Virus record (IMG/VR): IMGVR_UViG_3300033143_001962
Coordinates: 185,798-249,797 of that record
Strand: one strand, 5' to 3'
Length of the DNA stretch: 64,000 nt
Position numbers and translations under genes: made by a program. The notes under the pieces were generated by a model. The model did not search any database. It was not told where the DNA came from and worked only from the letters and a program-made list of their open reading frames with translations. Shown here in pieces: positions 14,864-27,848 of the stretch (the first letter of the stretch is position 1; each line of letters opens with the position of its first letter).

Positions 14864-15078
14864 TTTTTCACTACCTCTTCGGCGGTCTTAGCTGAGACTT
14901 CATGTTGACAATCATCGCAAGCTAACGCACAATTACTAATTGGCCCAGATAGGCCTTCTCTCATTAAACTTATATTATTACTGTTACAACGCCTACAGCT
15001 TCTAACTGAAAGAAACCGCATATAGCCTTCGTCAAATGTTTTAATGCCACCATTGACATTAATCCGTATTAGACTCAT
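14851..15078 (-). CDS. Lar (restriction alleviation)-like zinc ribbon
   Basis: CRRC...CDDC...SAKTAEEVVKKWN, Lar-family pattern. Confidence 0.55.
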   Translation of the reverse strand: MSLIRINVNGGIKTFDEGYMRFLSVRSCRRCNSNNISLMREGLSGPISNCALACDDCQHEVSAKTAEEVVKKWNG

Positions 15079-15364
15079 TGAGAAGTTTCTCTAGCATTTT
15101 GTATTGTTCGTAAGCATCTTTAAGTGCTGGATACTTCTCGTGCATTGCAAAGTTCGGTTCAAGTATAAGTAAACGTTCTTTAATTTGCTCTAACGTTTCT
15201 TTAATATCAACACCGTCAAGTGTTAAGTTGTCAGCTACCATGTCGCCATACGAAGATGCAAATGAAATTCCATCGTTGATTACATACATGCCATCGGCGT
15301 CAGTAATTAAGTCTGCACAGGCCGACAACACGTTTGGGTCTGTGCTGTGCGATTCACTTGCCAT
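15059..15364 (-). CDS. hypothetical, family B motif
   Basis: KYPALKDAYEQYKMLEKLL. Confidence 0.65.
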   Translation of the reverse strand: MASESHSTDPNVLSACADLITDADGMYVINDGISFASSYGDMVADNLTLDGVDIKETLEQIKERLLILEPNFAMHEKYPALKDAYEQYKMLEKLLNESNTD

Positions 15365-15650
15365 GCTTCATTGCTTCGAGTGTTATGAACTGAGTCAAAG
15401 CTTTATCAAAGTCTTCGTTCTCGGCAACTAAGTACAAGTTCTCTTTAGTTTGATGAACATGGTCATCGTACCAACTAAACCTAATAATCTTACCACCTGT
15501 TGCGTGAAGTATTTGGATGTTAAGTGGACGTTGCGAAAACACTCCACTATCATCACCTTCACGTACTGGCGCGTCGACTGAGCAATTACTGTACTTTGAT
15601 TGCTGGCCTTCTTCTGCCCACTGTGCTATTTTACGTTTGAACCATTTCAT
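15354..15650 (-). CDS. hypothetical protein
   Basis: ORF track, coupled. Confidence 0.6.
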   Translation of the reverse strand: MKWFKRKIAQWAEEGQQSKYSNCSVDAPVREGDDSGVFSQRPLNIQILHATGGKIIRFSWYDDHVHQTKENLYLVAENEDFDKALTQFITLEAMKHGK

Positions 15651-15658
15651 AAATCACC

Positions 15659-16339
15659 TTAACACTTGTTGTTATGGAATATAGACATAAACTCTTGTCT
15701 AGTACTAGGATCAGATTTAAATACGCCACCAAGCTTGCTTGTAATTGTGCTACTACCTACATCTTCAACACCGCGTGACTTAACACAAAAATGTTGTGCA
15801 TCCATAATAACTGCAACATCTTCTGTGTCTAATATAAATTGTAATGCGTTAAACACTTGCTCTGTTAAGCGTTCTTGTATTTGTGGACGTTTTGCAAAGT
15901 ACTCTACAATACGATTAATTTTACTCAACCCTAGTACAGTTTTCTTTGGAATGTAACCCACTGTAGCGAAGCCATCAATGACAACAAAGTGATGTTCGCA
16001 ATTTGATTGTACGTTTATGTTACGTTCAACAACCATTGCATCGTACTTCATCTTGTTTTCGACTGTTGTACACTTTGGAAATGCGGCTGGATCTAAGCCC
16101 CAAAACACTTCACCTACGTACATTTTCGCTACACGTTTAGGAGTATCAATGAGACTATCATCAGTCATGTCTAATCCTAACGTTTCCATAATATCCTTGA
16201 ACTTTGTTTCAATTATGTCAATTTTTGCTGATCTACTAAGTCCATTGTCGACCATTGGAGTTTGTACACCTTTTTCTTTAAGGTAGTCGTTTACCTCTTT
16301 ACCTAAATCTGAATCTGTTTTTACCTTGTTAAAACTCAT
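15659..16339 (-). CDS. folE: GTP cyclohydrolase I
   Basis: DTPKRVAKMY, SNCEHH, GLSKINRIV, RPQIQERLT, HFCVKSRGV. Confidence 0.95.
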   Translation of the reverse strand: MSFNKVKTDSDLGKEVNDYLKEKGVQTPMVDNGLSRSAKIDIIETKFKDIMETLGLDMTDDSLIDTPKRVAKMYVGEVFWGLDPAAFPKCTTVENKMKYDAMVVERNINVQSNCEHHFVVIDGFATVGYIPKKTVLGLSKINRIVEYFAKRPQIQERLTEQVFNALQFILDTEDVAVIMDAQHFCVKSRGVEDVGSSTITSKLGGVFKSDPSTRQEFMSIFHNNKC

Positions 16340-17012
16340 TTGTCTTCCTTTTCATGTGTTGTGTATAATTACCTATATCCCACTCTCTAGTGCAACATAA
16401 GCAACAAGCATTTCTGCCATTGAATCTTTTTCCATTGTGATTTATTATAGCAGCCTTTGCCATGCGTTGTCTAGTCTTTTGACTCTTAGGTTTATCTTTA
16501 TGCGTTGCTGCAATCAGGTCTTTTGTCTTATTAGTGTGCTTATGCCCTTCTGCGAACTTGTTACCTGTTACCGCTATAGATTGCGCAAGTCGTCCTGCAT
16601 CTGTTTCTTTAGTTTTGCCAAGTTGTCTTTCACGTTGATCTTGTGCAAGTTTTGCTTTTCGCTCAGGTGATCGTGTTGCTATAGTTTTTCTGCGCTTACT
16701 ATTAACGACTTCACCAAGGTCCCCACCACATCCGCCGTTAGCTACATTGTATCCATTCTGTGTGACATGTGACTCGTATAACTCTATAACAGGTTGTTCA
16801 AGGATTGAGATGTACTCTTTAGTTGGCCCTATACATAATGTTTCAATGATGAAATTTTCTACTCCGTACTTAGCAAACGCATATTGTACAGGATATTTAG
16901 GATTTTTAGCAGTACTTAAATGAATAGCCAGACGTTCTTCTACCTCTAGCTTAGTGAATCCGATATACGTTTTTCTGTTTATCAGATTTGTGATTTTGTA
17001 TAATTTATACAT
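16329..17012 (-). CDS. free-standing GIY-YIG homing endonuclease with NUMOD3-like repeats
   Basis: LYKITNLINRKTYIG, GYN...GG, HKHTNKTKDLI / KSQKTRQRMAKA. Confidence 0.88.
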   Translation of the reverse strand: MYKLYKITNLINRKTYIGFTKLEVEERLAIHLSTAKNPKYPVQYAFAKYGVENFIIETLCIGPTKEYISILEQPVIELYESHVTQNGYNVANGGCGGDLGEVVNSKRRKTIATRSPERKAKLAQDQRERQLGKTKETDAGRLAQSIAVTGNKFAEGHKHTNKTKDLIAATHKDKPKSQKTRQRMAKAAIINHNGKRFNGRNACCLCCTREWDIGNYTQHMKRKTNEF

Positions 17013-17089
17013 GTGTAATTCCTTTTATCGCATCTATCGTATATACGTAACGAGGCTGTTGCCTAAATACTACCGCTGTGTAGTTAAAA

Positions 17090-17716
17090 CTATTTATCCT
17101 TATTTATCGTTATTTCTCGCAGGTCTGGATATTCTTTGTACCCAGGACTACTTATTGTATTGATCTCATTGTTAGCTAATTTGTTCAAGCCGATTACTGC
17201 ATCTTCTGGACGCATCATATAGTGATAACCAATATCAAATTCTTTTTGATCTTTCCAGTGCTTAATGTCTGGATCACGCCCATCGTAAGATGCACGTTTA
17301 AGCCATTTGTATACTTCTCTGTTGTCTGTTAGTATTGCGCCACCATGTCCAATCTCAAGTGGCTTACCATGACCAAATGATAAGCATTGTACAGTCCTAG
17401 GTACGAACATATCTTTTTCAAATGTTCTAGCAAAATCCCAAATACCTGTACCACCTATGTTGTAGCCCTTATCCCACTTTTCTTCAGTGAACATATAACT
17501 AACGTCTAACTTTTCAAGTGTCATTAATACACTCAAGTAAGTGTTAGCAGGAATAGATGCGTACATTGGCGGACGCTTTCTACGTATGCCTAACTCAATT
17601 GCATGTGTGCAAGAGTCTGTTAACACGACACCAGGAGCACCTGTGTACTCGCTTATTGCTTTTTCAAATTCTTCAATTGCGTCAAATGGGTCTGTGTAGT
17701 CACTAATGTTTTTCAT
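17090..17716 (-). CDS. DegT/DnrJ/EryC1/StrS-like PLP aminotransferase (short form)
   Basis: EFEKAISEYTG, DSCTHAI, CLSFGHGKPLEIGHGGAILTD, GYHYMM. Confidence 0.75.
   Translation of the reverse strand: MKNISDYTDPFDAIEEFEKAISEYTGAPGVVLTDSCTHAIELGIRRKRPPMYASIPANTYLSVLMTLEKLDVSYMFTEEKWDKGYNIGGTGIWDFARTFEKDMFVPRTVQCLSFGHGKPLEIGHGGAILTDNREVYKWLKRASYDGRDPDIKHWKDQKEFDIGYHYMMRPEDAVIGLNKLANNEINTISSPGYKEYPDLREITINKDK
17091..17096 (-). promoter_or_regulatory. T4-like late promoter core (TAAATA)
   Basis: ATAAATA about 80 nt upstream of the endonuclease-folE unit. Confidence 0.5.
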
Positions 17717-18483
17717 AAGTATGCCTTTAGTTTTTCTGCGACAATCCGATTTGATTGTGGGCCAAGATGCCCAGCTGAATCGGATTGGTCCACAGACATT
17801 GTTTTAAAATCTGATTGTGTAAAATCCATATAAAAATCTTTATCAACTTGTGATATTAGCATCATAATATGATCGAGCCGTTGCTGTAACACATCATCTG
17901 GATATGCTGCTCCGTCAAACACTGCTTCCATTGCATCATTTAGTAAATGGTTACTCAACGGTACGTCCATTTGCACTATCTTATTAAGATAATTCGAAAA
18001 ACCGCTAACAAAAACGTACGGTATGTCTTTTTGTTTTAGCATACCCTGTAATGCTATAACATAGCTCAACCAATTGCAAATTTCAATGTACGTGTTCATA
18101 AAATGCTTCAAGTAGATTTTCCTAAAAGCACGAAAATCTTTATTCAATAACTTTGTACCTGTTGGTACAATACAGATCATATCTTCTCTGTCCGAATTCA
18201 ATGACCGGTGCATTGATAATCTACTCACCCCCGACCATTGAACTATAACACGATCATAGTCATTGATCGATAATGCTTGTACAGTCCTGCAGAAAATTTC
18301 GTGGTTAGACGAGCCGTCCCTTGCTCTATTATCTATTTTAACATTAAGATCCTGTTCTAATAGATTACTGTACAGGTACTTATTAATATCTTCGTCGGTT
18401 AGATACCCTGATGACTTCGAATGTGAGCATCCTACTAGTAAAATGTTTTCAATGTTTGTTGTAGTAGTCATTAAATGATTCAA
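17713..18483 (-). CDS. SGNH-hydrolase-like protein
   Basis: VGCSHS, GSSNHEI, IVQWS, HLGPQSN. Confidence 0.6.
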   Translation of the reverse strand: MNHLMTTTTNIENILLVGCSHSKSSGYLTDEDINKYLYSNLLEQDLNVKIDNRARDGSSNHEIFCRTVQALSINDYDRVIVQWSGVSRLSMHRSLNSDREDMICIVPTGTKLLNKDFRAFRKIYLKHFMNTYIEICNWLSYVIALQGMLKQKDIPYVFVSGFSNYLNKIVQMDVPLSNHLLNDAMEAVFDGAAYPDDVLQQRLDHIMMLISQVDKDFYMDFTQSDFKTMSVDQSDSAGHLGPQSNRIVAEKLKAYL

Positions 18484-19447
18484 TTATAGTTTTCATATCG
18501 CTAAATTGCGGTTGTGTGCTATTATAGTATAAACTAGCGTCTGCCACAAGTGAATCTGGGTCACCTTCACGTCTGGATTTTACCAAAACGTCTACTTTTC
18601 CGACAATATCTTCAAAAATATCAATTATTTGCTGATTACTGTACCCATCGTTCGTACCCAAATTGAATACTGCTGAGGATTGCCCTTCACTTAGGTCAAC
18701 ACATGCTTTTAAGTGTGCTAATGCGAGATCGCAGACATGAATATAATCACGAACGCAAGTGCCGTCAGGCGTATCGTAATCTGAGCCAAACAATTTAAAC
18801 ACGGTGTCGTTTTGATACGCTTCGAAAATGCGCGGTATAATGTGCGTATCATTTGGCTCTGGTCCTAGTTCGTTGTCCCATACATCTGCTCCTGCTGCGT
18901 TAAAATATCTAAAGCAATAACTTCTAAGGTCGTATGCTTTGTCATAATCTTCTAAGATAAGTTCAATCATCATCTTAGTACTACCATAAGGGTTACAAGG
19001 TACCGTTGGATCGGTCTCTTGTATCATAGCCGCGCAATTATCTGCATTGCCGTACACCGCGGCTGAGCTACTGAAAACAACGAATGGTGTATGCTTCAGC
19101 TTTCGCAGCTGATCTAGCATTTGAATTGTTTTAACCACATTGTTATTGTAGTACTCAGACGGGTCTAGTACACTTGGCCCAACTAAACTTGTTCCAGCAC
19201 AATGGACGACACCATCTAATGTACCGTATTTTTTAATATTTTCTTCATCAACGCAAAGCGCATCCCATAAGTCAGGATCGCCGTAATCGTTAGTAATGTA
19301 TTCAACACCTTTAACGATGTTTTGCTCAACGTGTCTGTTGTCGACTGAGATAACGTATGCACCTGCCTTGTGTAGTACTTTACAAGTGTGACTACCTACG
19401 TAGCCCATACCACCTGTTACTACTATTTTTAATCCGTCTAGTCTCAT
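18449..19447 (-). CDS. galE: UDP-glucose 4-epimerase
   Basis: VTGGMGYVGSH, FSSSAAVYG, YGSTK, RYFNAAGAD, DGTCVRDYIHV; start moved to MRLDG. Confidence 0.92.
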   Translation of the reverse strand: MRLDGLKIVVTGGMGYVGSHTCKVLHKAGAYVISVDNRHVEQNIVKGVEYITNDYGDPDLWDALCVDEENIKKYGTLDGVVHCAGTSLVGPSVLDPSEYYNNNVVKTIQMLDQLRKLKHTPFVVFSSSAAVYGNADNCAAMIQETDPTVPCNPYGSTKMMIELILEDYDKAYDLRSYCFRYFNAAGADVWDNELGPEPNDTHIIPRIFEAYQNDTVFKLFGSDYDTPDGTCVRDYIHVCDLALAHLKACVDLSEGQSSAVFNLGTNDGYSNQQIIDIFEDIVGKVDVLVKSRREGDPDSLVADASLYYNSTQPQFSDMKTIIESFNDYYNKH

Positions 19448-19719
19448 TTTGATAATTCCAATAATGTTATTAAGTGATTGTATGTTTCGTGTACTGCGGG
19501 GTTTTTGCTTTCGCACATCATATCAGTAAAACGTATTAAGTGACACATAGAATAAAAACGCTCATCGTCTATTTCAACTTTCATCTCAGTAATTACTTTA
19601 ACTGGATTTTCCATAGTGTCATGTGTCATTTCACGGATAGGCAACGGAACGTGCGTGTGCTTAACGTCCATTACTCTGAGTCCAAGTTTAGCTAATAGTT
19701 TCTGATTGATATTGGGCAT
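19444..19719 (-). CDS. hypothetical, family B motif
   Basis: KNPAVHETYNHLITLLELS. Confidence 0.6.
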   Translation of the reverse strand: MPNINQKLLAKLGLRVMDVKHTHVPLPIREMTHDTMENPVKVITEMKVEIDDERFYSMCHLIRFTDMMCESKNPAVHETYNHLITLLELSK

Positions 19720-20215
19720 CTATTACTCCTGTGCAATTACAAGTATAACATCTAACATCGTTCATGTCAATAGTGTGTTCGCCACCTTCAAAGTCTTCTA
19801 TAGATGGAGGCGGTAGTACATGATATCCTTTGCCGTTGCATTCTGGGCACGTCCTAGGGTTGCGTAATTTCCTACTTTCGGTTATCATTACTTCTAAGCG
19901 TATTTCGGTTGCCTGGATGTCTTCATGCCATGATGTACGCTGGATGAACAGGCCGTTTTCTTCATGCTTGTAAATTTGAATAGGTACTGCGCCACTGAAC
20001 CAATGCCCGTGTAACTTCCAATGCACTACAGGATCGTAGAACTTAACTTCTGTTATCTTCTGGCCAGGTACAAATGCTGCGGACCACTTATCCATTTCGA
20101 TCTTAGCAGGATCACGTAAGTACGTTGCTGTTACATCGTACTTAAAATCTTCAACCATAAACTTGTTACACAGGTAGTTATGCGACTCCTGATTTATTAA
20201 CTCAGTCGGTAACAC
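19688..20215 (-). CDS. hypothetical with DnaJ-type zinc finger
   Basis: CPECNGKG...CYTCNCTG. Confidence 0.55.
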   Translation of the reverse strand: MLPTELINQESHNYLCNKFMVEDFKYDVTATYLRDPAKIEMDKWSAAFVPGQKITEVKFYDPVVHWKLHGHWFSGAVPIQIYKHEENGLFIQRTSWHEDIQATEIRLEVMITESRKLRNPRTCPECNGKGYHVLPPPSIEDFEGGEHTIDMNDVRCYTCNCTGVIDAQYQSETIS

Positions 20216-20571
20216 TAAGGATCGTCCATGACAGGAACTTCATTTGCATTGCGACCATTCACTAATGCCATTGTAGTTAGTAGTCCTTCGAACGCATCTT
20301 TAATTGCCGGGTCATGTGAATTACGTATAGTATCCATTAGCTCTAAGTCTTTAATAAATTTTCCTAAGTTAATGTCCACGCCGTATATACTACCAGCAAA
20401 TGTTATCTCAGTATTCGTTGTTGCTGTATTATCGTACTTTTCAGTAACGCTTGCTACCATTAAATTATAATAAGATAGGTTTACTTTAAATGTGTCTTCA
20501 TTATTCATACTTTCCTGCTTGCACCATGTCTCTATAGCGCATATCATCTCGGTTCCATTCCTCACCACCAC
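20215..20571 (-). CDS. hypothetical, family B motif
   Basis: HDPAIKDAFEGLLTTMALV. Confidence 0.55.
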   Translation of the reverse strand: MVVRNGTEMICAIETWCKQESMNNEDTFKVNLSYYNLMVASVTEKYDNTATTNTEITFAGSIYGVDINLGKFIKDLELMDTIRNSHDPAIKDAFEGLLTTMALVNGRNANEVPVMDDP

Positions 20572-21679
20572 CTTGCATTATGTCAATGCACCGATCAATA
20601 GTACCGTTTGTCCAATCGCTTATCTTGCCTATGTTAGGACTTGGTGCATCTAATAATTTCATAAGTTTAGCTTCCGCATCATCTAAACTCCAAGGTACGT
20701 ATAAGCGATCTGCATCATTAGCAAATGTTTCCGGGAATGAACGGTATGCTGGATATAATACATTACATCCTAATGCGTCTGCTTCACTTACTGTATTACT
20801 AACCCAATCTTGTAATGCACAATTGAACATTATTCGACTATCGTTAACAATATCGTAGTACTGGTTCTTCTTTAAGTCTTCGTGTATAGTAAGTTTACCT
20901 TCTGCTTCTAACTTGCGAGCACGGTTAATAAACTTCTGATTGTTACTACGTAGTGGACCACCTTGCATAATTGCAAACTCCACTGTTGGATCTTTAGCTG
21001 TTACACGTTCAATTAAGTCCATGTAGAAGTCTGGTTGCTTCTCTTGATCCCAACGTGCGCCAAATACTACTCTGCGCTTACGTTCGTTAAAAGGTTTAAT
21101 GTTGTTATCAACTCTACCTTGTACTTCTTCTTTGCCAAATGCTAGTCCACTAATGTTATACAGTGGAGCAGTCCAGTTAGCTATCTTCATGTGTGCAACC
21201 ATTTCTTCATTAGTTGCAAGTACATGACAATTTGGAATTTCGTTAACCATTGCTTCGTACAATGACATCCACTTAGCCATACCCCATACATGAACAAAGT
21301 CATCTGGGTCTACTGCTTGTGCTAAACATCTTACGTATACTTGCGGTTGATCTTCTTTTGGTATCTGATTCATAATGTAAGGTAACGACTCGATACCAGG
21401 GCTAAACATATCTTCAAAAAAGATACAGTCTTCCCCGGTAACGTCACCGTTCCGCATCATTTGAACTAAGTTCATCATCTGCGACATTGAGAAATATGAT
21501 CTGCCATGGGCATCAAGCACTTGTCCCACTTGAATAGACTTAGTGTTGTCGATTTCCGTTCCGGGCACTATCACGTAATCTATGCCACGTTTCTTAAATG
21601 CCGCTTCGCTCCAGTCCTGTAACTGTAAGGTATATCTACCTTCATACGATTCCAAACCCATGTAAATCAATTTTCTCAT
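20501..21679 (-). CDS. GT-B (GT4-like) glycosyltransferase
   Basis: VVFGARWDQEKQPDF...ALQDWVSNTVSEADALGCNVLYP (ExxxxG acceptor motif variant). Confidence 0.75.
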   Translation of the reverse strand: MRKLIYMGLESYEGRYTLQLQDWSEAAFKKRGIDYVIVPGTEIDNTKSIQVGQVLDAHGRSYFSMSQMMNLVQMMRNGDVTGEDCIFFEDMFSPGIESLPYIMNQIPKEDQPQVYVRCLAQAVDPDDFVHVWGMAKWMSLYEAMVNEIPNCHVLATNEEMVAHMKIANWTAPLYNISGLAFGKEEVQGRVDNNIKPFNERKRRVVFGARWDQEKQPDFYMDLIERVTAKDPTVEFAIMQGGPLRSNNQKFINRARKLEAEGKLTIHEDLKKNQYYDIVNDSRIMFNCALQDWVSNTVSEADALGCNVLYPAYRSFPETFANDADRLYVPWSLDDAEAKLMKLLDAPSPNIGKISDWTNGTIDRCIDIMQGGGEEWNRDDMRYRDMVQAGKYE

Positions 21680-21688
21680 TTTCTTTCC

Positions 21689-21922
21689 TTATCGTTTGCC
21701 GGTGTATACTGGCTTGCTATGGAATCGGCGTAAGTCGAAATCCCATTGGTTCTTGCAATTTTTATTATTGCGGAACTTGTTGTACTGCTGGAAGGGATAT
21801 GTACGCATATTGTACATGTCAGCTTCGTTAAATTTATATCCGTGACTCACGCAAAATGCTTTGTACTTTTCTAAGTCATCAAACACTTGTTCCGTGCGCG
21901 GGTTTTTCTTTTTATACTTCAT
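21689..21922 (-). CDS. small basic hypothetical protein
   Basis: ORF track; start moved to MKYKKK. Confidence 0.55.
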   Translation of the reverse strand: MKYKKKNPRTEQVFDDLEKYKAFCVSHGYKFNEADMYNMRTYPFQQYNKFRNNKNCKNQWDFDLRRFHSKPVYTGKR

Positions 21923-21941
21923 TGTTAATTCCTTTATGGGA

Positions 21942-22376
21942 TTATAGTTTAGTGTAATGGATCTCCGATCCATTTTCGTTATCTTCGCTTACGCTTATTG
22001 TGATATCTCTTTCAGGATATCTGTTCGCAATGTAATTATAAAGTTCGTCGGATAGCATCTCGCATGACTTATAATCTAGTTGCAGAATATCTTGGTTGAA
22101 GCCATTAAGGCACCAACGCTTAAATTGTATAAATTCTATTTCTCTATCATTGTGGAATACTTCGATTGCAATTTTAAAATGGAACATGTGCCTATGTGGG
22201 TGGGCAAGGAAACTTACATCGTACTCGTCACCTGTTGCAAGGGCAGGATTAATCTTTGCGTCTGGGTAGTTGTGAACGCCTTCGCGTTGGAATGTTACCC
22301 AAATAAACCGCTGTGCGTTAGTCTTTACTGTATCAACTTTATCTTGCTTTGCTTGTATTCTTTGTTCTGTATCCAT
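21942..22376 (-). CDS. QueD-paralog T-fold protein, DpdL-like (putative CDG decarboxylase)
   Basis: LAHPHRHMF fits LxxxHRHxF; DREIEFIQFK, SCEMLS, ISVSEDNENG; DpdL motif recalled from the literature, not searched. Confidence 0.65.
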   Translation of the reverse strand: MDTEQRIQAKQDKVDTVKTNAQRFIWVTFQREGVHNYPDAKINPALATGDEYDVSFLAHPHRHMFHFKIAIEVFHNDREIEFIQFKRWCLNGFNQDILQLDYKSCEMLSDELYNYIANRYPERDITISVSEDNENGSEIHYTKL

Positions 22377-22411
22377 GTCTTATTATAACACCTTTAGTAA
22401 GTTAATGCTAG

Positions 22412-22639
22412 TTAAACGGTTCCACGTGCTTGTTTTTCAACAATTTCAATTTCAACTCGTTCTCGAATTGAATCCAATGCGTCCATTAAGTCGTCTTCAT
22501 TGCGTGGCTCGTGCTCGTCATTGATAAAATTCAATGTAGCATTAAACCCGTTTTCTTCTAAGAATTCATGTAGTGCTTGTGAAATTGCTGACTTGCCTAC
22601 ACCGGCTGCGCCAGTAACGGTTATTGTAATTTTACTCAT
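22412..22639 (-). CDS. small P-loop-containing protein
   Basis: TGAAGVGKS Walker A in 75 aa. Confidence 0.5.
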   Translation of the reverse strand: MSKITITVTGAAGVGKSAISQALHEFLEENGFNATLNFINDEHEPRNEDDLMDALDSIRERVEIEIVEKQARGTV

Positions 22640-23271
22640 ACTATTTTATCATCCTTGTATTTTTTCCAATTTGTGTACTTGTCTGGATCCATTAAGCTAT
22701 GTAACTTATGACACCATACACCTGGGTTCGATGCATCAAAATCTTTATCATCGATCTTAACTGTAGCGTTATATCCCATTTGGTTAGCATAAGGAATCTT
22801 ACAACTAATCATCGGAATGAAGTTATGCTTTTCGACTAAAATAGTTTCAACAATATCTTCTGCGTACTTAACGTCAAAGTCTAACGTACACCAAAAGTCA
22901 TCTACGTGCATAAGACAACCATTGATCATCTCAACCCATTCTCGCAACTGGTCCGACAGACTTGGCAACGGAGTGTTAATAAGATCAAAACTTTGATTGG
23001 CACCGAAGTAAATAGCCTGACATTGTAATGTGTTAGCTCTTGTAAGTATTTCTCTAAGGGGCTGCACACCTACAACAAATAATGTTTTAAGTTCATGTGC
23101 TGGTGTATGCTCTACTTCATAACCTATGAAGAAGTTAGCATCTGTATTTTCTGTTTCGTTTGTATAATCTCTTTTCATTTTCTTTCCTTGTGAACATTTA
23201 GGGCATGTTGCGCCATGTGGGTATTGTACCTTGTGCGTTGGACACAAATGATATGTATCTGCATTTAACAT
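22636..23271 (-). CDS. uncharacterised protein in the dpdA-dpdL interval
   Basis: FFIGYEVEHTP...IYFGANQSF...TVKIDDKDF...NPGVWCH; optional N-terminal C..H...C..C finger. Confidence 0.65.
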   Translation of the reverse strand: MLNADTYHLCPTHKVQYPHGATCPKCSQGKKMKRDYTNETENTDANFFIGYEVEHTPAHELKTLFVVGVQPLREILTRANTLQCQAIYFGANQSFDLINTPLPSLSDQLREWVEMINGCLMHVDDFWCTLDFDVKYAEDIVETILVEKHNFIPMISCKIPYANQMGYNATVKIDDKDFDASNPGVWCHKLHSLMDPDKYTNWKKYKDDKIV

Positions 23272-23513
23272 TTCTTATCCCAGTTTATATCTTCTTTGTT
23301 TGTCTTGTCTGTTAATATGTACGCAATGTAATGTCGCTCACCTTCCGGACCATCATCCCTTGCAACTTTATGTAATGTTAACGGTCTGCCTGGATCTCGC
23401 TTTAATAAATGCCAAATCTTTTCGGCATCGGGCAAGTCATCTACAATCATATCTCGTATAATGTGGTGTGGTATTTCAGCCATAGCTTCCGTGATTAACT
23501 GTTCTAGTTTCAC
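23265..23513 (-). CDS. hypothetical protein
   Basis: ORF track; N-terminus MKLEQLITEA. Confidence 0.5.
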   Translation of the reverse strand: MKLEQLITEAMAEIPHHIIRDMIVDDLPDAEKIWHLLKRDPGRPLTLHKVARDDGPEGERHYIAYILTDKTNKEDINWDKKC

Positions 23514-23754
23514 CTTCTGTACCGCATAGTTCGCAATACGGCGTATAGTCTGTATAATCTGTATCTAAGTATCCGCCTGGGCTGTAGTACTCCCTGGTCT
23601 TAACGTACTGCTGAGGATGGTGACATATACTTTTTAATTCTTCTTTCGCGTCCATGATTTCTTGAGACATTGCATCACGTTCAGCTTCTAATTCTGCAAT
23701 GTTTTTGTTCCAAGCTTTAATATCACGTATGTACATATTACTCTCCAAATTCAA
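23476..23754 (-). CDS. coiled-coil plus zinc-finger hypothetical protein
   Basis: CHHP...YCELCG. Confidence 0.55.
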   Translation of the reverse strand: MNLESNMYIRDIKAWNKNIAELEAERDAMSQEIMDAKEELKSICHHPQQYVKTREYYSPGGYLDTDYTDYTPYCELCGTEGETRTVNHGSYG

Positions 23755-25318
23755 ATAACGATGTTTCTGCTACTGAAGCCTTAACTAACTTTTCTTCTTC
23801 TTTTGCTGTTGCCTTAGCAACATCAAGATCAAACATATCGTCGAACTGTCCAGCTGCACTAATAGCTTTCTTACCGCCCATGCCACGTGCGCCACTGATC
23901 CCCATAAAGAACTTACTGTACACATCTAAAATTGCCATACGTTCTTCGTATGCATCTGTTGAGAACACTGCGTCAATAATATCAGTAATAGTTGTGCCTG
24001 TGTGAAGGTCTACTAACATTTTCGGCATAATACCTGCATCGTACTTGCGGTTAGCTTCTTGTACTGAATTAATATGGTGCCAAACATTGTGCCCCATCAT
24101 TAATGCATAACTGAAACTATCCCAAGATGTTTTACCTTCCTTCTTAATCTTATTAAGGTCGCCCGGTGCGTAAACATCAATGTCACTAATAAGTAGTTGT
24201 TCAGATATAGGACTGTCTTCAAATACATCATGAAACACCTTGCCAGTCTTTGGGTTAATGTCAGTTGTTGCAACTTCTGAGAACTTACGATTGTCTGTTG
24301 CGTACTTCTTATCGTCCATTGTAGGATTCATTCTATAACTCCACTTACCACTTTTGTTTGCTTTAGTAAGTGTTCTGTAATCAGGAGTAACAGTCTCATG
24401 ATATATTTGTCCATTGGCGGTAGCAAGAAACGGGCTGGCGCAATCAAAGGATATTGTAAAATTCTTATTATGTGTGCGTCTTACTGCCCGTTGTAATGCT
24501 GTTAATAACACCGCCCATTCTAGTTTTGATGTGCCTAAGAAATGCATCCAGTCTTGCTTGCCTTCCTCTAATAGACCATCATGAATAAGTGTAACTACTC
24601 GTTTAATAGCTAGGTGGGGATCAGCCATGTTAGCTCCTCCCATTGCCCAACCTTTAAAATACTTTTCGTGCTTAGTCGGATCGCTGTACTCTTTCATTTC
24701 TTCGTACCAACGATCAGCGTCGGCATGGTTACTTCCTTGTAGTACATTAAGGAACTTTGCATCGCCTGTAGCATGTTCCATAAAGTATTCGTGATTGTAC
24801 TTAGTCGCATCTACTGCGTCTTGGTAACTTTTAATATTTGTTTTCTTAACGGACTCTGGATTAGTACAAGTCCATGTAGGTATATCAAGTGTCATACTGT
24901 AATCACTAATGCTGCATAGCCATTTAAGTACTGTGCTTCTGTATTTTTCAGCTTTAGGACATTTAGGGTCAAGCCAGTCTGCTTCCCACACACCTTTTGC
25001 AATTTGGAATCCACCACTATCAGCTAACAGTAATGTATCACTGCTACGCTTACGGATCATATCTTCTTTAGGTACTTCCTTAGTTAAATCTAAGTTAGCG
25101 TGTCCTGCTGAGTACAATCCCCATTTGTACTTAAACAAACCTTCCTTGTTATTAAAGAAGTTCATCATTTCCATATCAGGAATGCCTGTAGGCATACGCT
25201 CTTGCGGAACGTTCTCTGGATCACTTTGCTGCTTACCAATGTAAGTGCTGTAGAAGCTACTAATAGCTGGTAAGAATAATGCGTAATCTTCTTGCTTATC
25301 TGTTAAATTTTTATTCAT
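23738..25318 (-). CDS. dpdA: DpdA/TGT-fold 7-deazaguanine transglycosylase
   Basis: ADSGGFQ, MTLDIP, FLNVLQG, GWAMGG, MHFLG, SFDCASP, GHN; no CxCxxC zinc site of tRNA TGTs. Confidence 0.8.
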   Translation of the reverse strand: MNKNLTDKQEDYALFLPAISSFYSTYIGKQQSDPENVPQERMPTGIPDMEMMNFFNNKEGLFKYKWGLYSAGHANLDLTKEVPKEDMIRKRSSDTLLLADSGGFQIAKGVWEADWLDPKCPKAEKYRSTVLKWLCSISDYSMTLDIPTWTCTNPESVKKTNIKSYQDAVDATKYNHEYFMEHATGDAKFLNVLQGSNHADADRWYEEMKEYSDPTKHEKYFKGWAMGGANMADPHLAIKRVVTLIHDGLLEEGKQDWMHFLGTSKLEWAVLLTALQRAVRRTHNKNFTISFDCASPFLATANGQIYHETVTPDYRTLTKANKSGKWSYRMNPTMDDKKYATDNRKFSEVATTDINPKTGKVFHDVFEDSPISEQLLISDIDVYAPGDLNKIKKEGKTSWDSFSYALMMGHNVWHHINSVQEANRKYDAGIMPKMLVDLHTGTTITDIIDAVFSTDAYEERMAILDVYSKFFMGISGARGMGGKKAISAAGQFDDMFDLDVAKATAKEEEKLVKASVAETSLFEFGE

Positions 25319-25544
25319 AATCTGATTCGTGTGGTCCGTCTGTTAATGCATAGAAGGTGCCTAGTGCCGTTACCTTATCAAATGCTTCTCTAATCTCAGG
25401 GATTGCGTTGTGTACGCTTGCCCTGTCATATCCTTTGGCGTTGTTTTTGTCAAGTAAAAGTTCATAGTACGCCCATACTTCATTTTCTAATGGAGTTGTG
25501 TGTCTGCCATACTGGCCGTGATTGGGACTATCTTCTTGTATCAT
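25311..25544 (-). CDS. hypothetical, divergent family B motif
   Basis: AIPEIREAFDKVTAL. Confidence 0.5.
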   Translation of the reverse strand: MIQEDSPNHGQYGRHTTPLENEVWAYYELLLDKNNAKGYDRASVHNAIPEIREAFDKVTALGTFYALTDGPHESDYE

Positions 25545-25765
25545 AGTTTGTATTTTAACATAAATGCTGTCTTACTACTATCGTTCTGGAACTTTACATC
25601 TTTAATACCGTAGTTGCATTCATCCATAATAAGCTTGCAGCCGTAGTCTTCTTGAAACTGTTCTAGTGTTTTGCCATCAAAGACATAACTTTTAAGTGCG
25701 GTAGCAAGCACCTTTAACTCTTCGCGGTCGAGTTTAATGTCTAGGAACATGTGTTCCTTCTTCAC
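25541..25765 (-). CDS. hypothetical, family C
   Basis: ends FQNDSSKTAFMLKYKL. Confidence 0.6.
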   Translation of the reverse strand: MKKEHMFLDIKLDREELKVLATALKSYVFDGKTLEQFQEDYGCKLIMDECNYGIKDVKFQNDSSKTAFMLKYKL

Positions 25766-25956
25766 AAGCTACCCCATTTAAGTACAAATGCAGTTCTATC
25801 TTTTTCATCTGCTATGTACACTCTGACAATACTTTTAAATGTTATTGGATCCACAATAGGTTCTACTATGTTTGCTATGATATCTGAATCAAGTATCCAC
25901 TCTTTCATTAGCTTGTAAGTATCTGGTTCTGTAAGTTCAGCTTTTATTATTTGCAT
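25762..25956 (-). CDS. hypothetical, family C
   Basis: ends IADEKDRTAFVLKWGSL. Confidence 0.6.
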   Translation of the reverse strand: MQIIKAELTEPDTYKLMKEWILDSDIIANIVEPIVDPITFKSIVRVYIADEKDRTAFVLKWGSL

Positions 25957-26225
25957 TATCTAACTAAACTCTTAAGCATTTGGTACTTTTCCCAAGCTTC
26001 TGCAATTGCTGGATTATCACCATCTGCATCGGCTTGATCCATTAGCTTCCAGTAGTTCTTCTCCCACTGTGGTCTGTCTTCTAAGTGTTTACGTTCAGTA
26101 ACCTTAACGCCCATTAATGTACGTATAACATCAATTTGTTCAAACGCATCTTTAAGTGCTGGGTTGTCGTCGTGAAACTTTGTTTGTGATTCTAGCCAAG
26201 ACAGTTCTTTTTCCATGTCGTTCAT
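25956..26225 (-). CDS. family B protein with two motif copies
   Basis: DNPALKDAFEQIDVIRTLM and DNPAIAEAWEKYQMLKSLV. Confidence 0.7.
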   Translation of the reverse strand: MNDMEKELSWLESQTKFHDDNPALKDAFEQIDVIRTLMGVKVTERKHLEDRPQWEKNYWKLMDQADADGDNPAIAEAWEKYQMLKSLVR

Positions 26226-26416
26226 GTTACTAACCTCAATGTTACTCGATACTGCTCGTATGCATCCATTACTGCTGGATGCAGCCTGCGGATGTTTGCT
26301 TCCTGCACTGCGAGGGATTGTAGTCTTATCAACTCAGATTGCAACTCATCAATGCGATGTTGCTTCTCGTCAAGTTCGCTGTGAGTTGGTGGACGTTTTG
26401 ATCTGTACTCTATCAT
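26222..26416 (-). CDS. family B protein
   Basis: LHPAVMDAYEQYRVTLRLV; start moved to MIEYRS. Confidence 0.7.
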   Translation of the reverse strand: MIEYRSKRPPTHSELDEKQHRIDELQSELIRLQSLAVQEANIRRLHPAVMDAYEQYRVTLRLVT

Positions 26417-26607
26417 TGTATTAACTCCAACATAAGTTGATATTGATCCCACAGTTCTTTGAGACCTGGATGCTCGGCACGTAATTCTTCCTGTACTTCA
26501 TCAATCTGATCACGCGCCCTGATTTCAGCAGTAAGTTGTCTAATAATAGTACTACGGTTATCACGTATGTCACCGTCTATTGTGTACTCTTGGCCTTCTT
26601 CTAACAT
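26413..26607 (-). CDS. family B protein
   Basis: EHPGLKELWDQYQLMLELI. Confidence 0.7.
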   Translation of the reverse strand: MLEEGQEYTIDGDIRDNRSTIIRQLTAEIRARDQIDEVQEELRAEHPGLKELWDQYQLMLELIQ

Positions 26608-26798
26608 TATGCTATCAGCCTTTTAGTCAATTGAAACTTTTCGTATAAGTCTTGTAGTGCTGGGTTTTGTTCACGTAAGTATTCGTCCCAGTTAAGCGCG
26701 TCTTCAAGATCTCTAACCCTGGCGTCAAGGTCACGTATAACCGTAGACAGATCCTCTCCTGCTGTGTAACCACCAGAAAAGTTACGCGATATTGACAT
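26607..26798 (-). CDS. family B protein
   Basis: QNPALQDLYEKFQLTKRLI. Confidence 0.7.
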   Translation of the reverse strand: MSISRNFSGGYTAGEDLSTVIRDLDARVRDLEDALNWDEYLREQNPALQDLYEKFQLTKRLIA

Positions 26799-27072
26799 CT
26801 GCTGTTACCTTTGCTAATGCTGCTATTACTTTGTACTTGTCGTAAGCATCTTTAACAGATGGGTTACTTTTAATTAACGCGTCTTCTTCCATTAATCTAC
26901 TTTCAAGTAGCTCAAAGTTCACTTGTAACATATCAAGTCTACGCTGCATATCCTGCATACCAAATCCTGGACTAACCTGTACTTCCATTGTAGGACTTCC
27001 GTCGTGGTTACTATAAGTTTGAAACTTATTAATCATAATAAGATTCTCGTCCATGGATTTGATATCAAACAT
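26782..27072 (-). CDS. family B protein
   Basis: SNPSVKDAYDKYKVIAALA. Confidence 0.7.
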   Translation of the reverse strand: MFDIKSMDENLIMINKFQTYSNHDGSPTMEVQVSPGFGMQDMQRRLDMLQVNFELLESRLMEEDALIKSNPSVKDAYDKYKVIAALAKVTADVNIA

Positions 27073-27075
27073 ATT

Positions 27076-27795
27076 TTACTTGCTCTGTGCTGGTAAGATG
27101 TAAGTGTATTCAGCCATACCGCTGTCTACAATGATTTGTGCTGCGCCATCATCACTGATGCGTAGTACCTTGTCGCCTGGTAGGCTTAAGATGTTAATAA
27201 CATGAGCTACAGGCCAATGCCACTTGCGCTTAAGTTCACCTTGCACGTCTGCTGCAAACACAAAGTTACCTGCGTGTGTGCTATGATCGCCGAAGTAAAA
27301 CTTCAAGTCACCATCTTCGGTTGTTGCAATAAATGTAGTTTCACCTGGGTTAGCTTGTGCTTGATACTTAAGACGCATAATAGCTGCTACTGTAGGTTCA
27401 AGTTCAACGTTCCAGTTAACACCTTTAAACTTAACTTCTTTTAATTTTTCTTCAACAACTTCTTGAGCCATAAAGCGGAAATCGTTTGTGAAGTCACCTG
27501 TGTCATTTTTGAAGTTCATGTTAGACGGACCTTTGTCACTTTGCACTACTGTAATTGTAGCGTTTTCAGCGTAAGGTTCAAGACTGATAATAGTCTTTAA
27601 TGTACTCATTGTTGGCATACCAAATGTTCCTACGAACTCTGGAATTGCAGTATGGAACTTTGCTTGAATAACAACACTGTGGTCGTCTGCTAATCCATCT
27701 ACTACTGTTGACTTATCGTCTCCAGTTATTTTTACTAAATCAACACATCCTAAATCATGTGTATGTGTAATCAAATCCTTTAAATTGTCAATCAT
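27076..27795 (-). CDS. putative DNA sliding clamp (gp45/PCNA-like)
   Basis: 239 aa, alternating beta/alpha pattern with two-domain symmetry, ends YTYILPA; lies next to polB. Confidence 0.55.
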   Translation of the reverse strand: MIDNLKDLITHTHDLGCVDLVKITGDDKSTVVDGLADDHSVVIQAKFHTAIPEFVGTFGMPTMSTLKTIISLEPYAENATITVVQSDKGPSNMNFKNDTGDFTNDFRFMAQEVVEEKLKEVKFKGVNWNVELEPTVAAIMRLKYQAQANPGETTFIATTEDGDLKFYFGDHSTHAGNFVFAADVQGELKRKWHWPVAHVINILSLPGDKVLRISDDGAAQIIVDSGMAEYTYILPAQSK

Positions 27796-27819: not shown

Positions 27820-27848
27820 ATTATACATTATGTATAACAGTATATCAA
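27820..27848 (-). promoter_or_regulatory. sigma70-type promoter
   Basis: TTGATA-17 nt-TATAAT upstream of the clamp gene. Confidence 0.7.

What the first reader, a model, noticed from the sequence alone, without database searches (positions are those of the whole stretch)
15059..27072. Shared C-terminal 'P-A-L-K-D-A-Y-E-Q-Y' helix on nine otherwise unrelated small proteins (family B), five in tandem between the clamp gene and dpdA
Seen: ten copies of [HND]-P-x-[LIV]-x-[DE]-[AL]-[YFW]-[ED]-[QK]-[YFL]-x3-[LM]-x2-L in 15059, 19444, 20215, 25311, 25956 (twice), 26222, 26413, 26607 and 26782. The motif is near the C-terminus in most copies, often after a coiled coil, and the upstream regions differ. 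I recognise no named domain. Inference: a portable docking or sorting peptide that recruits many different small proteins to one partner (clamp, RNA polymerase, ClpA or a viral compartment), or a homotypic assembly tag forming a combinatorial network.
Basis: partly seen in the sequence, partly recalled or inferred. Interest (0 to 1): 0.7.

Follow-up and report, generated by a model that had tools for sequence, protein, structure and literature searches.

The report
Expanded phage helical-hairpin small-protein family
The repeated "P-A-L-K-D-A-Y-E-Q-Y" helix is real: it is the turn plus second helix of a roughly 45-residue helical hairpin that defines an unnamed family of small phage proteins, with 17 genes in this 250-kb phage genome and hundreds of relatives in metagenomes, and its function is still unknown.

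Summary
All ten motif copies sit where stated, all on the minus strand inside small ORFs. Seven copies in six ORFs are robust: a model built only from other phages finds them at E<1e-7. ORFs 20215 and 19444 are divergent members. ORF 25311 is marginal. Shuffled and reversed ORFs give no hits.

A second tandem array of eight genes lies outside the window. Related uncultured phages keep the order DNA polymerase, clamp, hairpin array, dpdA. That slot holds two to nine hairpin ORFs in them, in conserved order among the closest relatives.

A profile search finds 851 protein clusters, nearly all 40-140 aa with the hairpin at the C-terminus. One context is a P22-like phage. A scan of 185,579 prokaryote species genomes found none. 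Pfam, PHROGs, NCBIfam, PDB sequences and fold searches return no named family.

This is a paralogous domain family, not a peptide grafted onto unrelated proteins. My best guess is a protein-protein association module. The partner is unknown.

The parts
26782..27072 (-). Hairpin-family gene 1 of the clamp-dpdA array (96 aa; motif SNPSVKDAYDKYKVIAALAKV followed by an 8-aa tail)
   Evidence: External-only HMM E=1.1e-11. Collinear orthologues in L003, L006, L007, L008, L012 and L015.
26607..26798 (-). Hairpin-family gene 2 (63 aa; motif QNPALQDLYEKFQLTKRLIA at the C-terminus)
   Evidence: External-only HMM E=2.1e-13. AF2 model with pLDDT 84: helix 17-44, break at N-P, helix 46-62. Orthologues at 47-52% identity in L003, L006 and L007.
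26413..26607 (-). Hairpin-family gene 3 (64 aa; motif EHPGLKELWDQYQLMLELIQ at the C-terminus)
   Evidence: External-only HMM E=4.2e-12. Orthologues in L003, L006 and L007. Its stop overlaps the next gene's start as ATGA.
26222..26416 (-). Hairpin-family gene 4 (64 aa from the ATG at 26416; the ORF listing gave a GTG start at 26452). Motif LHPAVMDAYEQYRVTLRLVT at the C-terminus.
   Evidence: External-only HMM E=7.7e-11. ATGA stop/start overlap, with GGAG 8 nt upstream of the ATG.
25956..26225 (-). Hairpin-family gene 5 (89 aa), with two hairpin motifs in one chain: DNPALKDAFEQIDVIRTL and DNPAIAEAWEKYQMLKSLVR
   Evidence: Two HMM domains. A two-hairpin subfamily is conserved in L003, L006, L007 and in metagenomic proteins P0015, P0017, P0018, P0021, P0045, P0061 and P0064. 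AF2 predicts the expected helices, but with low confidence (pLDDT 60, pTM 0.31).
25311..25544 (-). Marginal member (77 aa; AIPEIREAFDKVTALGTF), the last small ORF before dpdA
   Evidence: Matches only the loose pattern and the self-seeded HMM. Not found by the external HMM. Orthologues in L003 and L006.
20215..20571 (-). Divergent member (118 aa; HDPAIKDAFEGLLTTMALV), directly downstream of a group-1 glycosyltransferase gene
   Evidence: External HMM E=0.44. Positional orthologues L012:10416-10682 (DPAVKEAWDQLITVSALKS) and L014:3166-3489 have motifs closer to the family consensus.
19444..19719 (-). Divergent member (91 aa; KNPAVHETYNHLITLLELSK at the C-terminus, in the family register)
   Evidence: Aligns over 73 aa with the strong member L008:4126-4389, which is P0028. 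Not significant with the external HMM.
15059..15364 (-). Scattered member (101 aa; KYPALKDAYEQYKMLEKLL) near the GTP cyclohydrolase I-like gene (named from reading the sequence)
   Evidence: External HMM E about 3e-8. It is the window protein most like the single family member in Pseudomonas phage PA5oct, EST35_0319 (40% over 43 aa).
27076..27795 (-). Sliding-clamp-like gene that heads the operon (context)
   Evidence: 34% identity to the PA5oct protein, which one record annotates as PCNA. 61-77% identity in L003, L006, L007, L008, L012 and L015, and always just upstream of the array.
23738..25318 (-). dpdA-like gene that closes the slot (context)
   Evidence: Weak tgt-superfamily match, E=0.0023. 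68-88% identity in L003, L006, L012 and L015, downstream of the arrays.
27820..27848 (-). Sigma-70-like promoter candidate (TTGATA-17-TATAAT, 11 of 12) upstream of the clamp gene
   Evidence: Consensus scan only. The number of sites in the region is not above the shuffled expectation.
25541..25956 (-). Two motif-less small ORFs (25762-25956 and 25541-25765) lying between the five tandem hairpin genes and 25311-25544
   Evidence: No HMM hit. 25541 has orthologues in L003 and L006.

Best explanation
Shown. This hairpin defines an unnamed family of small, soluble, mostly acidic phage proteins. The genome has 17 such genes: a tandem array of five between the clamp and dpdA genes, a second array of eight outside the window, and four scattered or divergent copies. 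The array members are old tandem paralogues. They keep their order among the closest relatives, while diverging much faster than the flanking genes.

Inferred. The hairpin is a protein-protein association module. Two helices bury too little hydrophobic surface to be stable alone, and helix 2 has a hydrophobic arc of about 180 degrees, wider than helix 1 can cover. I therefore think hairpins most likely pair with one another, as homo- or hetero-dimers, into four-helix bundles. The variable and often disordered N-terminal segments would then be presented in pairs or combinations. The naturally fused two-hairpin proteins are consistent with this reading. The array appears to be co-transcribed and translationally coupled with the clamp and dpdA genes. 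What the assemblies act on is unknown.

The descriptive part is well supported, at about 0.9. The confidence figure below is for the mechanism.
For: Motif is real and enriched:
-.
- 16 real ORFs against 0 in 20 shuffles and 0 in reversed ORFs.
- An independent external model recovers 12 genome ORFs at E<1e-7.

Hairpin structure:
- AF2 model of the 63-aa protein has pLDDT 84, above 90 over residues 21-63. Helix 17-44, break at N-P, helix 46-62.

Signature conservation in 167 aligned domains:
- R 92%, P 93%, W/Y 97%, Y 93%, final L 91%, D/E 96%.

Second array:
- Genome 103775-105906, which is L001:5773-7904.

Synteny and copy number:
- The order DNA polymerase, clamp, hairpin array holds in L003, L006, L007, L008, L012, L015 and L019, with two to nine hairpin ORFs. 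dpdA follows the array wherever the contig reaches that far.
- Orthologues are collinear in L003 and L006 at 27-52% identity. The clamp is 75-77% and dpdA 83-88% identical in those loci.

Family size and shape:
- 851 clusters at E<=1e-3 among 1.84 billion representatives.
- In the top set the median length is 80 aa. About 60% end within 3 residues of the model's end.

Two-hairpin fusions:
- Found in 9 of 158 top members and conserved as a subfamily.

Physical properties:
- No transmembrane segment.
- pI is 4.2-5.1 for 11 of the 17 proteins.

Translational coupling and promoter:
- ATGA overlap and overlapping ORF ends.
- Promoter candidate upstream of the clamp gene.
Against: - No direct evidence of self-association. 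The single complex job (a homodimer) gave no verdict and cannot be counted either way.
- The AF2 model of the natural two-hairpin protein is low confidence (pTM 0.31). It does not show the two hairpins packing together.
- Strongly conserved polar residues on helix 2 (D/E, E/D and Q at signature positions 29, 32 and 35) would fit docking to one conserved external partner equally well.
- Helix 1 has no detectable sequence conservation.
- No expression or proteomic data could be obtained for this phage.
Confidence: 0.4

Rival explanations
1. Common-partner docking module. The hairpin, through the conserved polar and aromatic face of helix 2, binds one conserved host or phage hub such as RNA polymerase, a chaperone or protease, or the ribosome. 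Each paralogue delivers a different N-terminal segment to that hub.
For: - Polar positions are very highly conserved across distant phage types: R 92%, D/E 96%, E/D 95%, Q 80%.
- The family occurs in a PA5oct-like jumbo lineage, in a P22-like phage (L011: Terminase_3 plus P22 portal) and beside ThyX and transaldolase genes. A shared partner would therefore have to be widely conserved.
- N-terminal parts are variable or disordered.
Against: - No candidate partner was identified or tested.
- The host is unknown.
- The conserved charged residues could equally be intra-hairpin or inter-hairpin salt bridges.
Confidence: 0.3
2. Clamp-docking tails. The C-terminal helix tethers the small proteins to the phage sliding clamp encoded just upstream, as the C-terminal tails of T4 gp33, gp55 and gp43 bind gp45.
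For: - The array lies directly downstream of the clamp gene in the window and in L003, L006, L007, L008, L012, L015 and L019.
- The motif usually sits at the extreme C-terminus.
Against: - None of the 17 proteins has a PIP-box, beta-clamp or T4-type tail motif.
- The motif is a 17-residue amphipathic helix modelled as packed in a hairpin, not a short extended peptide.
- The larger array of eight genes is about 107 kb from the clamp gene.
- No clamp gene is seen beside the family copy in the P22-like locus L011 or in L018.
- PA5oct has no copy in the clamp slot.
Confidence: 0.08
3. Sorting or targeting signal. The C-terminal helix is either a membrane-targeting amphipathic helix of the MinD/FtsA type, or a packaging signal that loads the proteins into the capsid, as the N-terminal capsid-targeting sequence does for T4 internal proteins.
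For: - It is an amphipathic helix at the extreme C-terminus with aromatic residues and a basic end, consensus ...LKLVKK.
- Many different small proteins share one terminal module.
Against: - Two nearly invariant acidic residues lie in the helix, which is unusual for membrane-targeting helices.
- The helix is modelled as packed against helix 1.
- The PA5oct member EST35_0319 is annotated 'hypothetical protein' without the ESI-MS/MS virion note that neighbouring EST35_0314 carries.
- The genes sit among replication and DNA-modification genes, not structural genes.
Confidence: 0.07
4. Fast-evolving accessory genes of a hyperplastic region, for example anti-defence or host-takeover factors, in which the hairpin is only a stable scaffold. 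Each paralogue would have its own unrelated target.
For: - Copy number in the clamp-dpdA slot ranges from 0 (PA5oct) to 9 (L019).
- Orthologues are 27-52% identical, against 75-88% for the flanking genes.
- A strict-pattern scan found no copy in 185,579 prokaryote species genomes.
Against: - The most conserved part is the shared hairpin, not the variable parts. Target-specific arms races usually give the opposite pattern.
- The 63-64-aa members have almost nothing besides the hairpin.
Confidence: 0.12

Closest known systems
Antiparallel helical-hairpin oligomerisation domains (ROP/Rom; hepatitis delta antigen oligomerisation domain 1A92; H-NS-family N-terminal domains)
   Same: A hairpin of about 45-60 residues made of two antiparallel amphipathic helices joined by a tight turn. 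1A92 and an H-NS-family N-terminal domain (5B52) appear among the best short-chain structural matches. Such hairpins normally function by pairing into four-helix bundles (established knowledge).
   Different: All matches have Z below 5, which is the generic level for helices. Foldseek finds nothing against PDB. There is no sequence similarity. The NP turn and the DAWExYQ signature are specific to this family. Dimerisation is not shown here.
T4 internal proteins sharing a capsid-targeting sequence
   Same: Several small, otherwise different phage proteins carry one short conserved terminal module (established knowledge of T4 IPI-III and Alt).
   Different: The T4 signal is N-terminal, about 10 residues long, and removed by the prohead protease. 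Here the module is C-terminal, about 26-45 residues long, and predicted to fold as a domain. The one cultured-phage member has no virion mass-spectrometry note.
C-terminal sliding-clamp-binding tails (T4 gp33/gp55/gp43 to gp45; PIP box; bacterial QL[SD]LF)
   Same: The location is at the extreme C-terminus, and the genes are linked to a clamp gene.
   Different: None of the defining short motifs is present. The element is a long amphipathic helix inside a hairpin. The family also occurs away from clamp genes.
Lineage-specific expansions of small domains in jumbo phages, for example about 35 zinc-ribbon copies in Bacillus phage G (PMC7824862)
   Same: One small domain is multiplied to many copies within a large phage genome, with function unknown or only guessed.
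   Different: The fold is different: an alpha-hairpin with no metal ligands. The family also occurs as single copies in small phages, and the array order is conserved among relatives.
Tetratricopeptide (TPR) helix B, turn, helix A junction
   Same: The same spacing of proline to tryptophan ('DPNNAEAW' in TPR against 'NPALQDAW' here) at a helix-turn-helix junction. The TPR string is recalled from memory of the consensus and was not tested.
   Different: No TPR model matches at E<=1. There are one or two hairpins rather than three or more 34-residue repeats. The G8 and A20/A27 positions are absent.

Membership tests
Any named Pfam, PHROGs or NCBIfam family | Significant profile match above the curated cut-off | tested here: not met
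   Pfam: nothing above threshold for the 9 window and 8 array-A proteins. PHROGs: only scattered single hits at E of 1e-3 or weaker among 54 domains. NCBIfam: none. PDB sequences: 0 hits at E<=10.
Clamp-binding peptides (PIP box, beta-clamp motif, T4 gp45-binding tail) | Q-x-x-[ILM]-x-x-[FY]-[FY], or QL[SD]LF-like, or an LDFL[FY]-like C-terminal peptide | tested here: not met
   A regex scan of all 17 proteins found no match.
Clamp-binding peptides (PIP box, beta-clamp motif, T4 gp45-binding tail) | Physical binding to the clamp's hydrophobic pocket | not tested
T4-type capsid-targeting sequence | N-terminal, about 10 residues, followed by a prohead-protease cleavage site; the proteins are found in virions | tested here: not met
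   The module is C-terminal. The PA5oct member lacks the ESI-MS/MS virion note in its record. No virion data exist for this phage.
MinD/FtsA-type C-terminal membrane-targeting helix | A short amphipathic helix at the extreme C-terminus whose polar face is basic, without conserved acidic residues | tested here: inconclusive
   The C-terminal amphipathic helix with a basic end is present. Against this, D/E at 96% and E/D at 95% are conserved within it, and it is modelled as packed on helix 1.
ROP-like antiparallel hairpin dimers | Helix-turn-helix hairpin fold | tested here: met
   AF2: helix 17-44 and helix 46-62, pLDDT above 90 over the hairpin.
ROP-like antiparallel hairpin dimers | Dimerisation into a four-helix bundle | tested here: inconclusive
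   The homodimer prediction returned no verdict. The two-hairpin protein model is low confidence.
ROP-like antiparallel hairpin dimers | Detectable sequence or structural homology | tested here: not met
   No PDB sequence hit. Foldseek against PDB finds nothing. The best VIA Z is 4.9.
TPR repeats | Three or more tandem 34-residue repeats matching TPR profiles | tested here: not met
   No TPR family among the Pfam results at E<=1. There are one or two hairpins per protein.
J-domain (HPD loop between helices II and III) | Invariant H-P-D and a four-helix domain of about 70 residues matching PF00226 | tested here: not met
   The residue after P is A or G in 81% of domains. There is no DnaJ Pfam hit.

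The most novel reading that the evidence does not exclude
The NP-ALQDAWEQYQ hairpin is a universal adaptor used by very different marine phages: jumbo PA5oct-like phages, P22-like phages and others. Through one conserved face it plugs a repertoire of variable N-terminal peptides into a single conserved host hub, or into each other. The 17 paralogues of this phage would then form a combinatorial set of small regulators acting during replication and DNA modification. That would make it a previously unrecognised, widespread phage protein-interaction code.
Probability: 0.2. Interest if true: 0.75.

Novelty: new variant of a known kind. Interest (0 to 1): 0.5.

Why it matters
Small phage ORFs of 50-100 codons are usually written off as unrelated hypothetical proteins. 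Here 17 of them in one genome, and at least 851 clusters in public metagenomes, turn out to share one sharply conserved hairpin domain with no entry in Pfam, PHROGs, NCBIfam or the PDB.

Defining the family gives annotators a handle on these genes. It also shows that a conserved genomic slot between the clamp and dpdA genes expands and contracts by whole hairpin genes. And it offers a compact, testable module of 63 aa, predicted with high confidence, for asking how phages build sets of small interacting proteins. If the hairpin proves to be a pairing or docking device, it would also be a useful minimal tag.

Tried and rejected
- **Homodimer prediction.** The 63-aa protein (window:26610-26798) gave no verdict. 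It is not evidence either way.
- **AF2 of the two-hairpin protein.** The helices are as expected, but pLDDT is 60 and pTM 0.31. It does not show how the two hairpins are arranged.
- **Fold searches.** Foldseek against PDB gave one hit at E=10. BFVD gave nothing at E<=0.001. VIA-align wide gave a best Z of 4.9, all generic helices. The ESM Atlas returned only unnamed viral clusters and no named cluster.
- **tblastn against 50,697 phage records.** Queries were the two-hairpin protein, a 55-aa consensus-like member and P0069. None matched. The only cultured-phage member found was PA5oct EST35_0319, by profile search of that record. Vibrio phage 2.275.O has none.
- **Prokaryote genomes.** A strict [LV][KQ]DAWE[KQ]Y pattern over 185,579 species genomes found no relative.
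- **Sequencing runs.** None was listed for the stretch tried (window:24000-28000), so expression could not be checked and read laying was not used.
- **Literature.** Six motif strings gave 0 papers. The jumbo-phage comparative paper and the PA5oct omics paper had no hits for the search terms tried and showed nothing on such a family.
- **Ideas dropped.**
  - PIP box or beta-clamp motif: the regex scan was negative.
  - J-domain HPD loop: no D after the P, and no Pfam hit.
  - TPR: no profile hit.
  - Transmembrane or secreted proteins: no hydrophobic segment.
- **ThyX neighbour of P0069.** Used to place that contig. The best hits were only 51% identical, to Rhodobacter phages, so this was not informative.
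- **PA5oct sequence in remote jobs.** I removed that row and sent the PA5oct sequence to no remote job.

Full report
**What the window is.** The window is the last 64 kb of a single-contig virus record of 249,797 bp. Almost all genes in the region run on the minus strand. The clamp-like protein (27076-27795) is 34% identical to that of Pseudomonas jumbo phage PA5oct. The DNA polymerase, clamp and dpdA-like genes are collinear with PA5oct and with several uncultured IMG/VR contigs.

**Checking the observation.** A loose form of the motif, P-x-[LIVM]-x-x-[ALT]-[YFW]-[EDN], hits 16 places in the six frames of the window.

An HMM built from the ten copies finds 16 ORFs in the whole genome at E<=1e-3. 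Twenty full shuffles of all 3,563 ORFs give none, and neither do the reversed ORFs. That HMM contains the window's own copies, so I also built one only from related IMG/VR loci. It still recovers 12 genome ORFs at E<1e-7. Six of them are in the window: 15059, 25956 (two copies), 26222, 26413, 26607 and 26782.

The remaining three reader copies are weaker:
- 20215 is tied to the family through positional orthologues whose motif is closer to the family consensus (L012:10416-10682, 'DPAVKEAWDQLITVSALKS').
- 19444 aligns over 73 residues with a strong member.
- 25311 is only marginal.

**What the motif really is.** Aligning 167 domains from the best 150 hits of the large search, plus family proteins found earlier, gives this signature: E-E-x-L-R-x-x-[NH]-P-[AG]-[LV]-[QK]-[DE]-[AL]-[WY]-[ED]-[QK]-Y-Q-x-x-[LK]-x-L. 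Conservation is R 92%, P 93%, W/Y 97%, Y 93% and final L 91%. The profile consensus is DDLERELKKLESILEEEEKLRKDNPALKDAWEKYQTILKLVKK.

AlphaFold2, given a family alignment, models the 63-aa protein 26607-26798 as a disordered N-terminus, a helix at 17-44, a break at the N-P, and a helix at 46-62. pLDDT is above 90 across the hairpin. In the 63-64-aa members that hairpin is about 70% of the protein.

The first helix has a heptad pattern but no detectable sequence conservation: a helix-1-only HMM finds nothing. None of the 17 proteins has a transmembrane-like segment. Eleven of the 17 have a pI of 4.2-5.1.

**Extent in this genome.** Beyond the nine window ORFs, a second tandem array of eight hairpin genes lies at genome 103775-105906, which is L001:5773-7904. 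Its consensus is even cleaner, for example 'LREEHPALKDAWEKYQIILKM'. That makes 17 genes and 19 hairpin motifs.

In the window array the genes overlap or abut. The junction of 26413 and 26222 is an ATGA overlap, with GGAG eight bases upstream. This favours the ATG at 26416 over the GTG at 26452 as the start. A near-consensus sigma-70-like promoter sits just upstream of the clamp gene (27848-27820). This is only a pattern match. It fits PA5oct's reliance on the host RNA polymerase (PMC7318152).

**Relatives.** IMG/VR and metagenome loci L003, L006, L007, L008, L012, L015 and L019 share the order DNA polymerase, clamp, hairpin array. dpdA follows the array wherever the contig reaches that far. 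Their clamps are 61-77% identical to the window's. The slot holds about two (L015) to nine (L019) hairpin ORFs. PA5oct has none in the slot and one a few genes downstream (EST35_0319).

In the closest relatives the five window genes have collinear orthologues (L003: 5420, 5733, 5926, 6128, 6319). They are only 27-52% identical in L003 and L006, while the clamp is 75-77% and dpdA 83-88% identical in the same loci. The paralogues are therefore old, individually retained and fast-evolving. They are not recent copies.

The complete 344-kb relative (the contig behind L003, handle G001) gave nine matches, six of them in a single array. So the second array is not universal. L002 does share it.

**Wider distribution.**
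- A profile search of 1.84 billion representative proteins gives 851 clusters at E<=1e-3 and 31 at E<=1e-10.
- The best 158 have a median length of 80 aa. About 60% end within three residues of the model's end. Nine carry two hairpins.
- One context is a P22-like phage (L011: Terminase_3 plus P22 portal).
- Another context lies beside transaldolase, ThyX and radical-SAM genes.
- A strict-pattern scan of 185,579 prokaryote species genomes found no relative.
- tblastn of three members against 50,697 phage records found nothing.

**Comparison with known families.** Pfam, PHROGs, NCBIfam, PDB sequences, Foldseek against PDB and BFVD, an exhaustive VIA-align pass and the ESM Atlas give no named match. 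The best structural neighbours are generic hairpins with Z below 5. Among the short chains are oligomerisation hairpins such as the hepatitis delta antigen domain and an H-NS-family N-terminal domain. This is suggestive and no more. No PIP-box, beta-clamp or T4-type tail motif is present.

**How it most likely works.** The following is shown: a conserved hairpin domain, old tandem paralogy, conserved placement in a replication and DNA-modification gene block, and soluble acidic proteins.

The mechanism is inferred. A 45-residue two-helix hairpin buries too little surface to stand alone. The hydrophobic positions of helix 2 span roughly 180 degrees of the helical wheel, more than helix 1 can cover. 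This is my own reading of the consensus. The natural two-hairpin fusions are what one would expect if hairpins pair.

I therefore favour self- or cross-pairing of hairpins into four-helix bundles that display the variable N-terminal segments, at about 0.4. The main rival, at about 0.3, is docking of the conserved polar and aromatic face to one conserved external partner. Nothing here separates the two.

The clamp-tail idea is kept low, at about 0.08. The synteny favours it, but there is no clamp-binding motif, the larger array is about 107 kb away, and members occur with no clamp gene nearby. Membrane or capsid targeting is also unlikely, at about 0.07, because of the conserved acidic residues, the packed helix and the absence of a virion note for the PA5oct member.

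**Verdict.** It is wrong in treating the proteins as unrelated and the module as a bare peptide. This is an undescribed, phage-restricted small-domain family with a striking lineage-specific expansion. Its function remains to be found.

Noticed in passing
genome 103775-105906 (L001:5773-7904, minus strand), outside the window: A second and larger tandem array of eight hairpin-family genes. One motif-less 62-aa ORF (L001:6283-6471) lies within it, between the second and third genes. The array sits next to a family-2 glycosyltransferase gene (identified from its L002 orthologue) and an ORF that reads like a metallophosphatase. The array is shared with metagenomic contig L002.
   Followed up: partly
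window 25541-25765 and 25762-25956 (minus strand): Two adjacent small ORFs inside the array operon lack the hairpin motif but share a similar C-terminal ending with each other ('SKTAFMLKYKL' and 'DRTAFVLKWGSL'). They may be another mini-family. 25541 has orthologues in L003 and L006.
   Followed up: partly
L001:5773-6009, L001:6009-6290; proteins P0112, P0143, P0153: Some family members carry the hairpin in the middle of the protein. It is followed by a basic tail with a second recurring short motif, roughly [AS]-D-[VI]-L-x-x-[IV]-R-x-R, sometimes repeated.
   Followed up: no
L001:6946-7218 and L001:7336-7752: Two array-A proteins have proline-rich tracts ('VVPPPPPPRPPRG' and 'HHLRPPPMPRVKP') just upstream of the hairpin.
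   Followed up: no
L001:7336-7752; L008:4524-4727; L019:7289-7501: A subfamily has a 5-6-residue insertion inside helix 2, for example 'ETYEAYQHAKLQYEMMLKL'. It recurs in three different phages.
   Followed up: no
window 27820-27848 (minus strand): A near-consensus sigma-70-like promoter (TTGATA-17-TATAAT, 11 of 12) lies immediately upstream of the clamp gene start. The scan found no terminator-like site on the coding strand between it and dpdA.
   Followed up: partly
window 16329-17012 (minus strand): A 227-aa ORF whose N-terminus reads like a GIY-YIG homing endonuclease ('YKITNLINRKTYIGFT'). It is wedged between an ORF I read as GTP cyclohydrolase I (15659-16339) and a 208-aa ORF (17090-17716) that I did not identify. 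None of these was tested with a profile.
   Followed up: no
window 15659-25318: The scattered hairpin genes sit within a block of candidate DNA-modification and sugar-modification genes: the GTP cyclohydrolase I-like ORF, an epimerase-like ORF (18449-19516), a group-1 glycosyltransferase (20501-21679, Pfam E=1e-6), a QueD-like ORF (21942-22376) and the dpdA-like ORF. Only the glycosyltransferase and a weak tgt match for dpdA were checked.
   Followed up: partly
L016 (PA5oct, MK797984.1 221902-222648): The PA5oct homologue of the clamp is annotated 'structural protein (ESI-MS/MS)' in that record, and 'proliferating cell nuclear antigen' in phage PAC2. The annotations of one protein disagree.
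   Followed up: no
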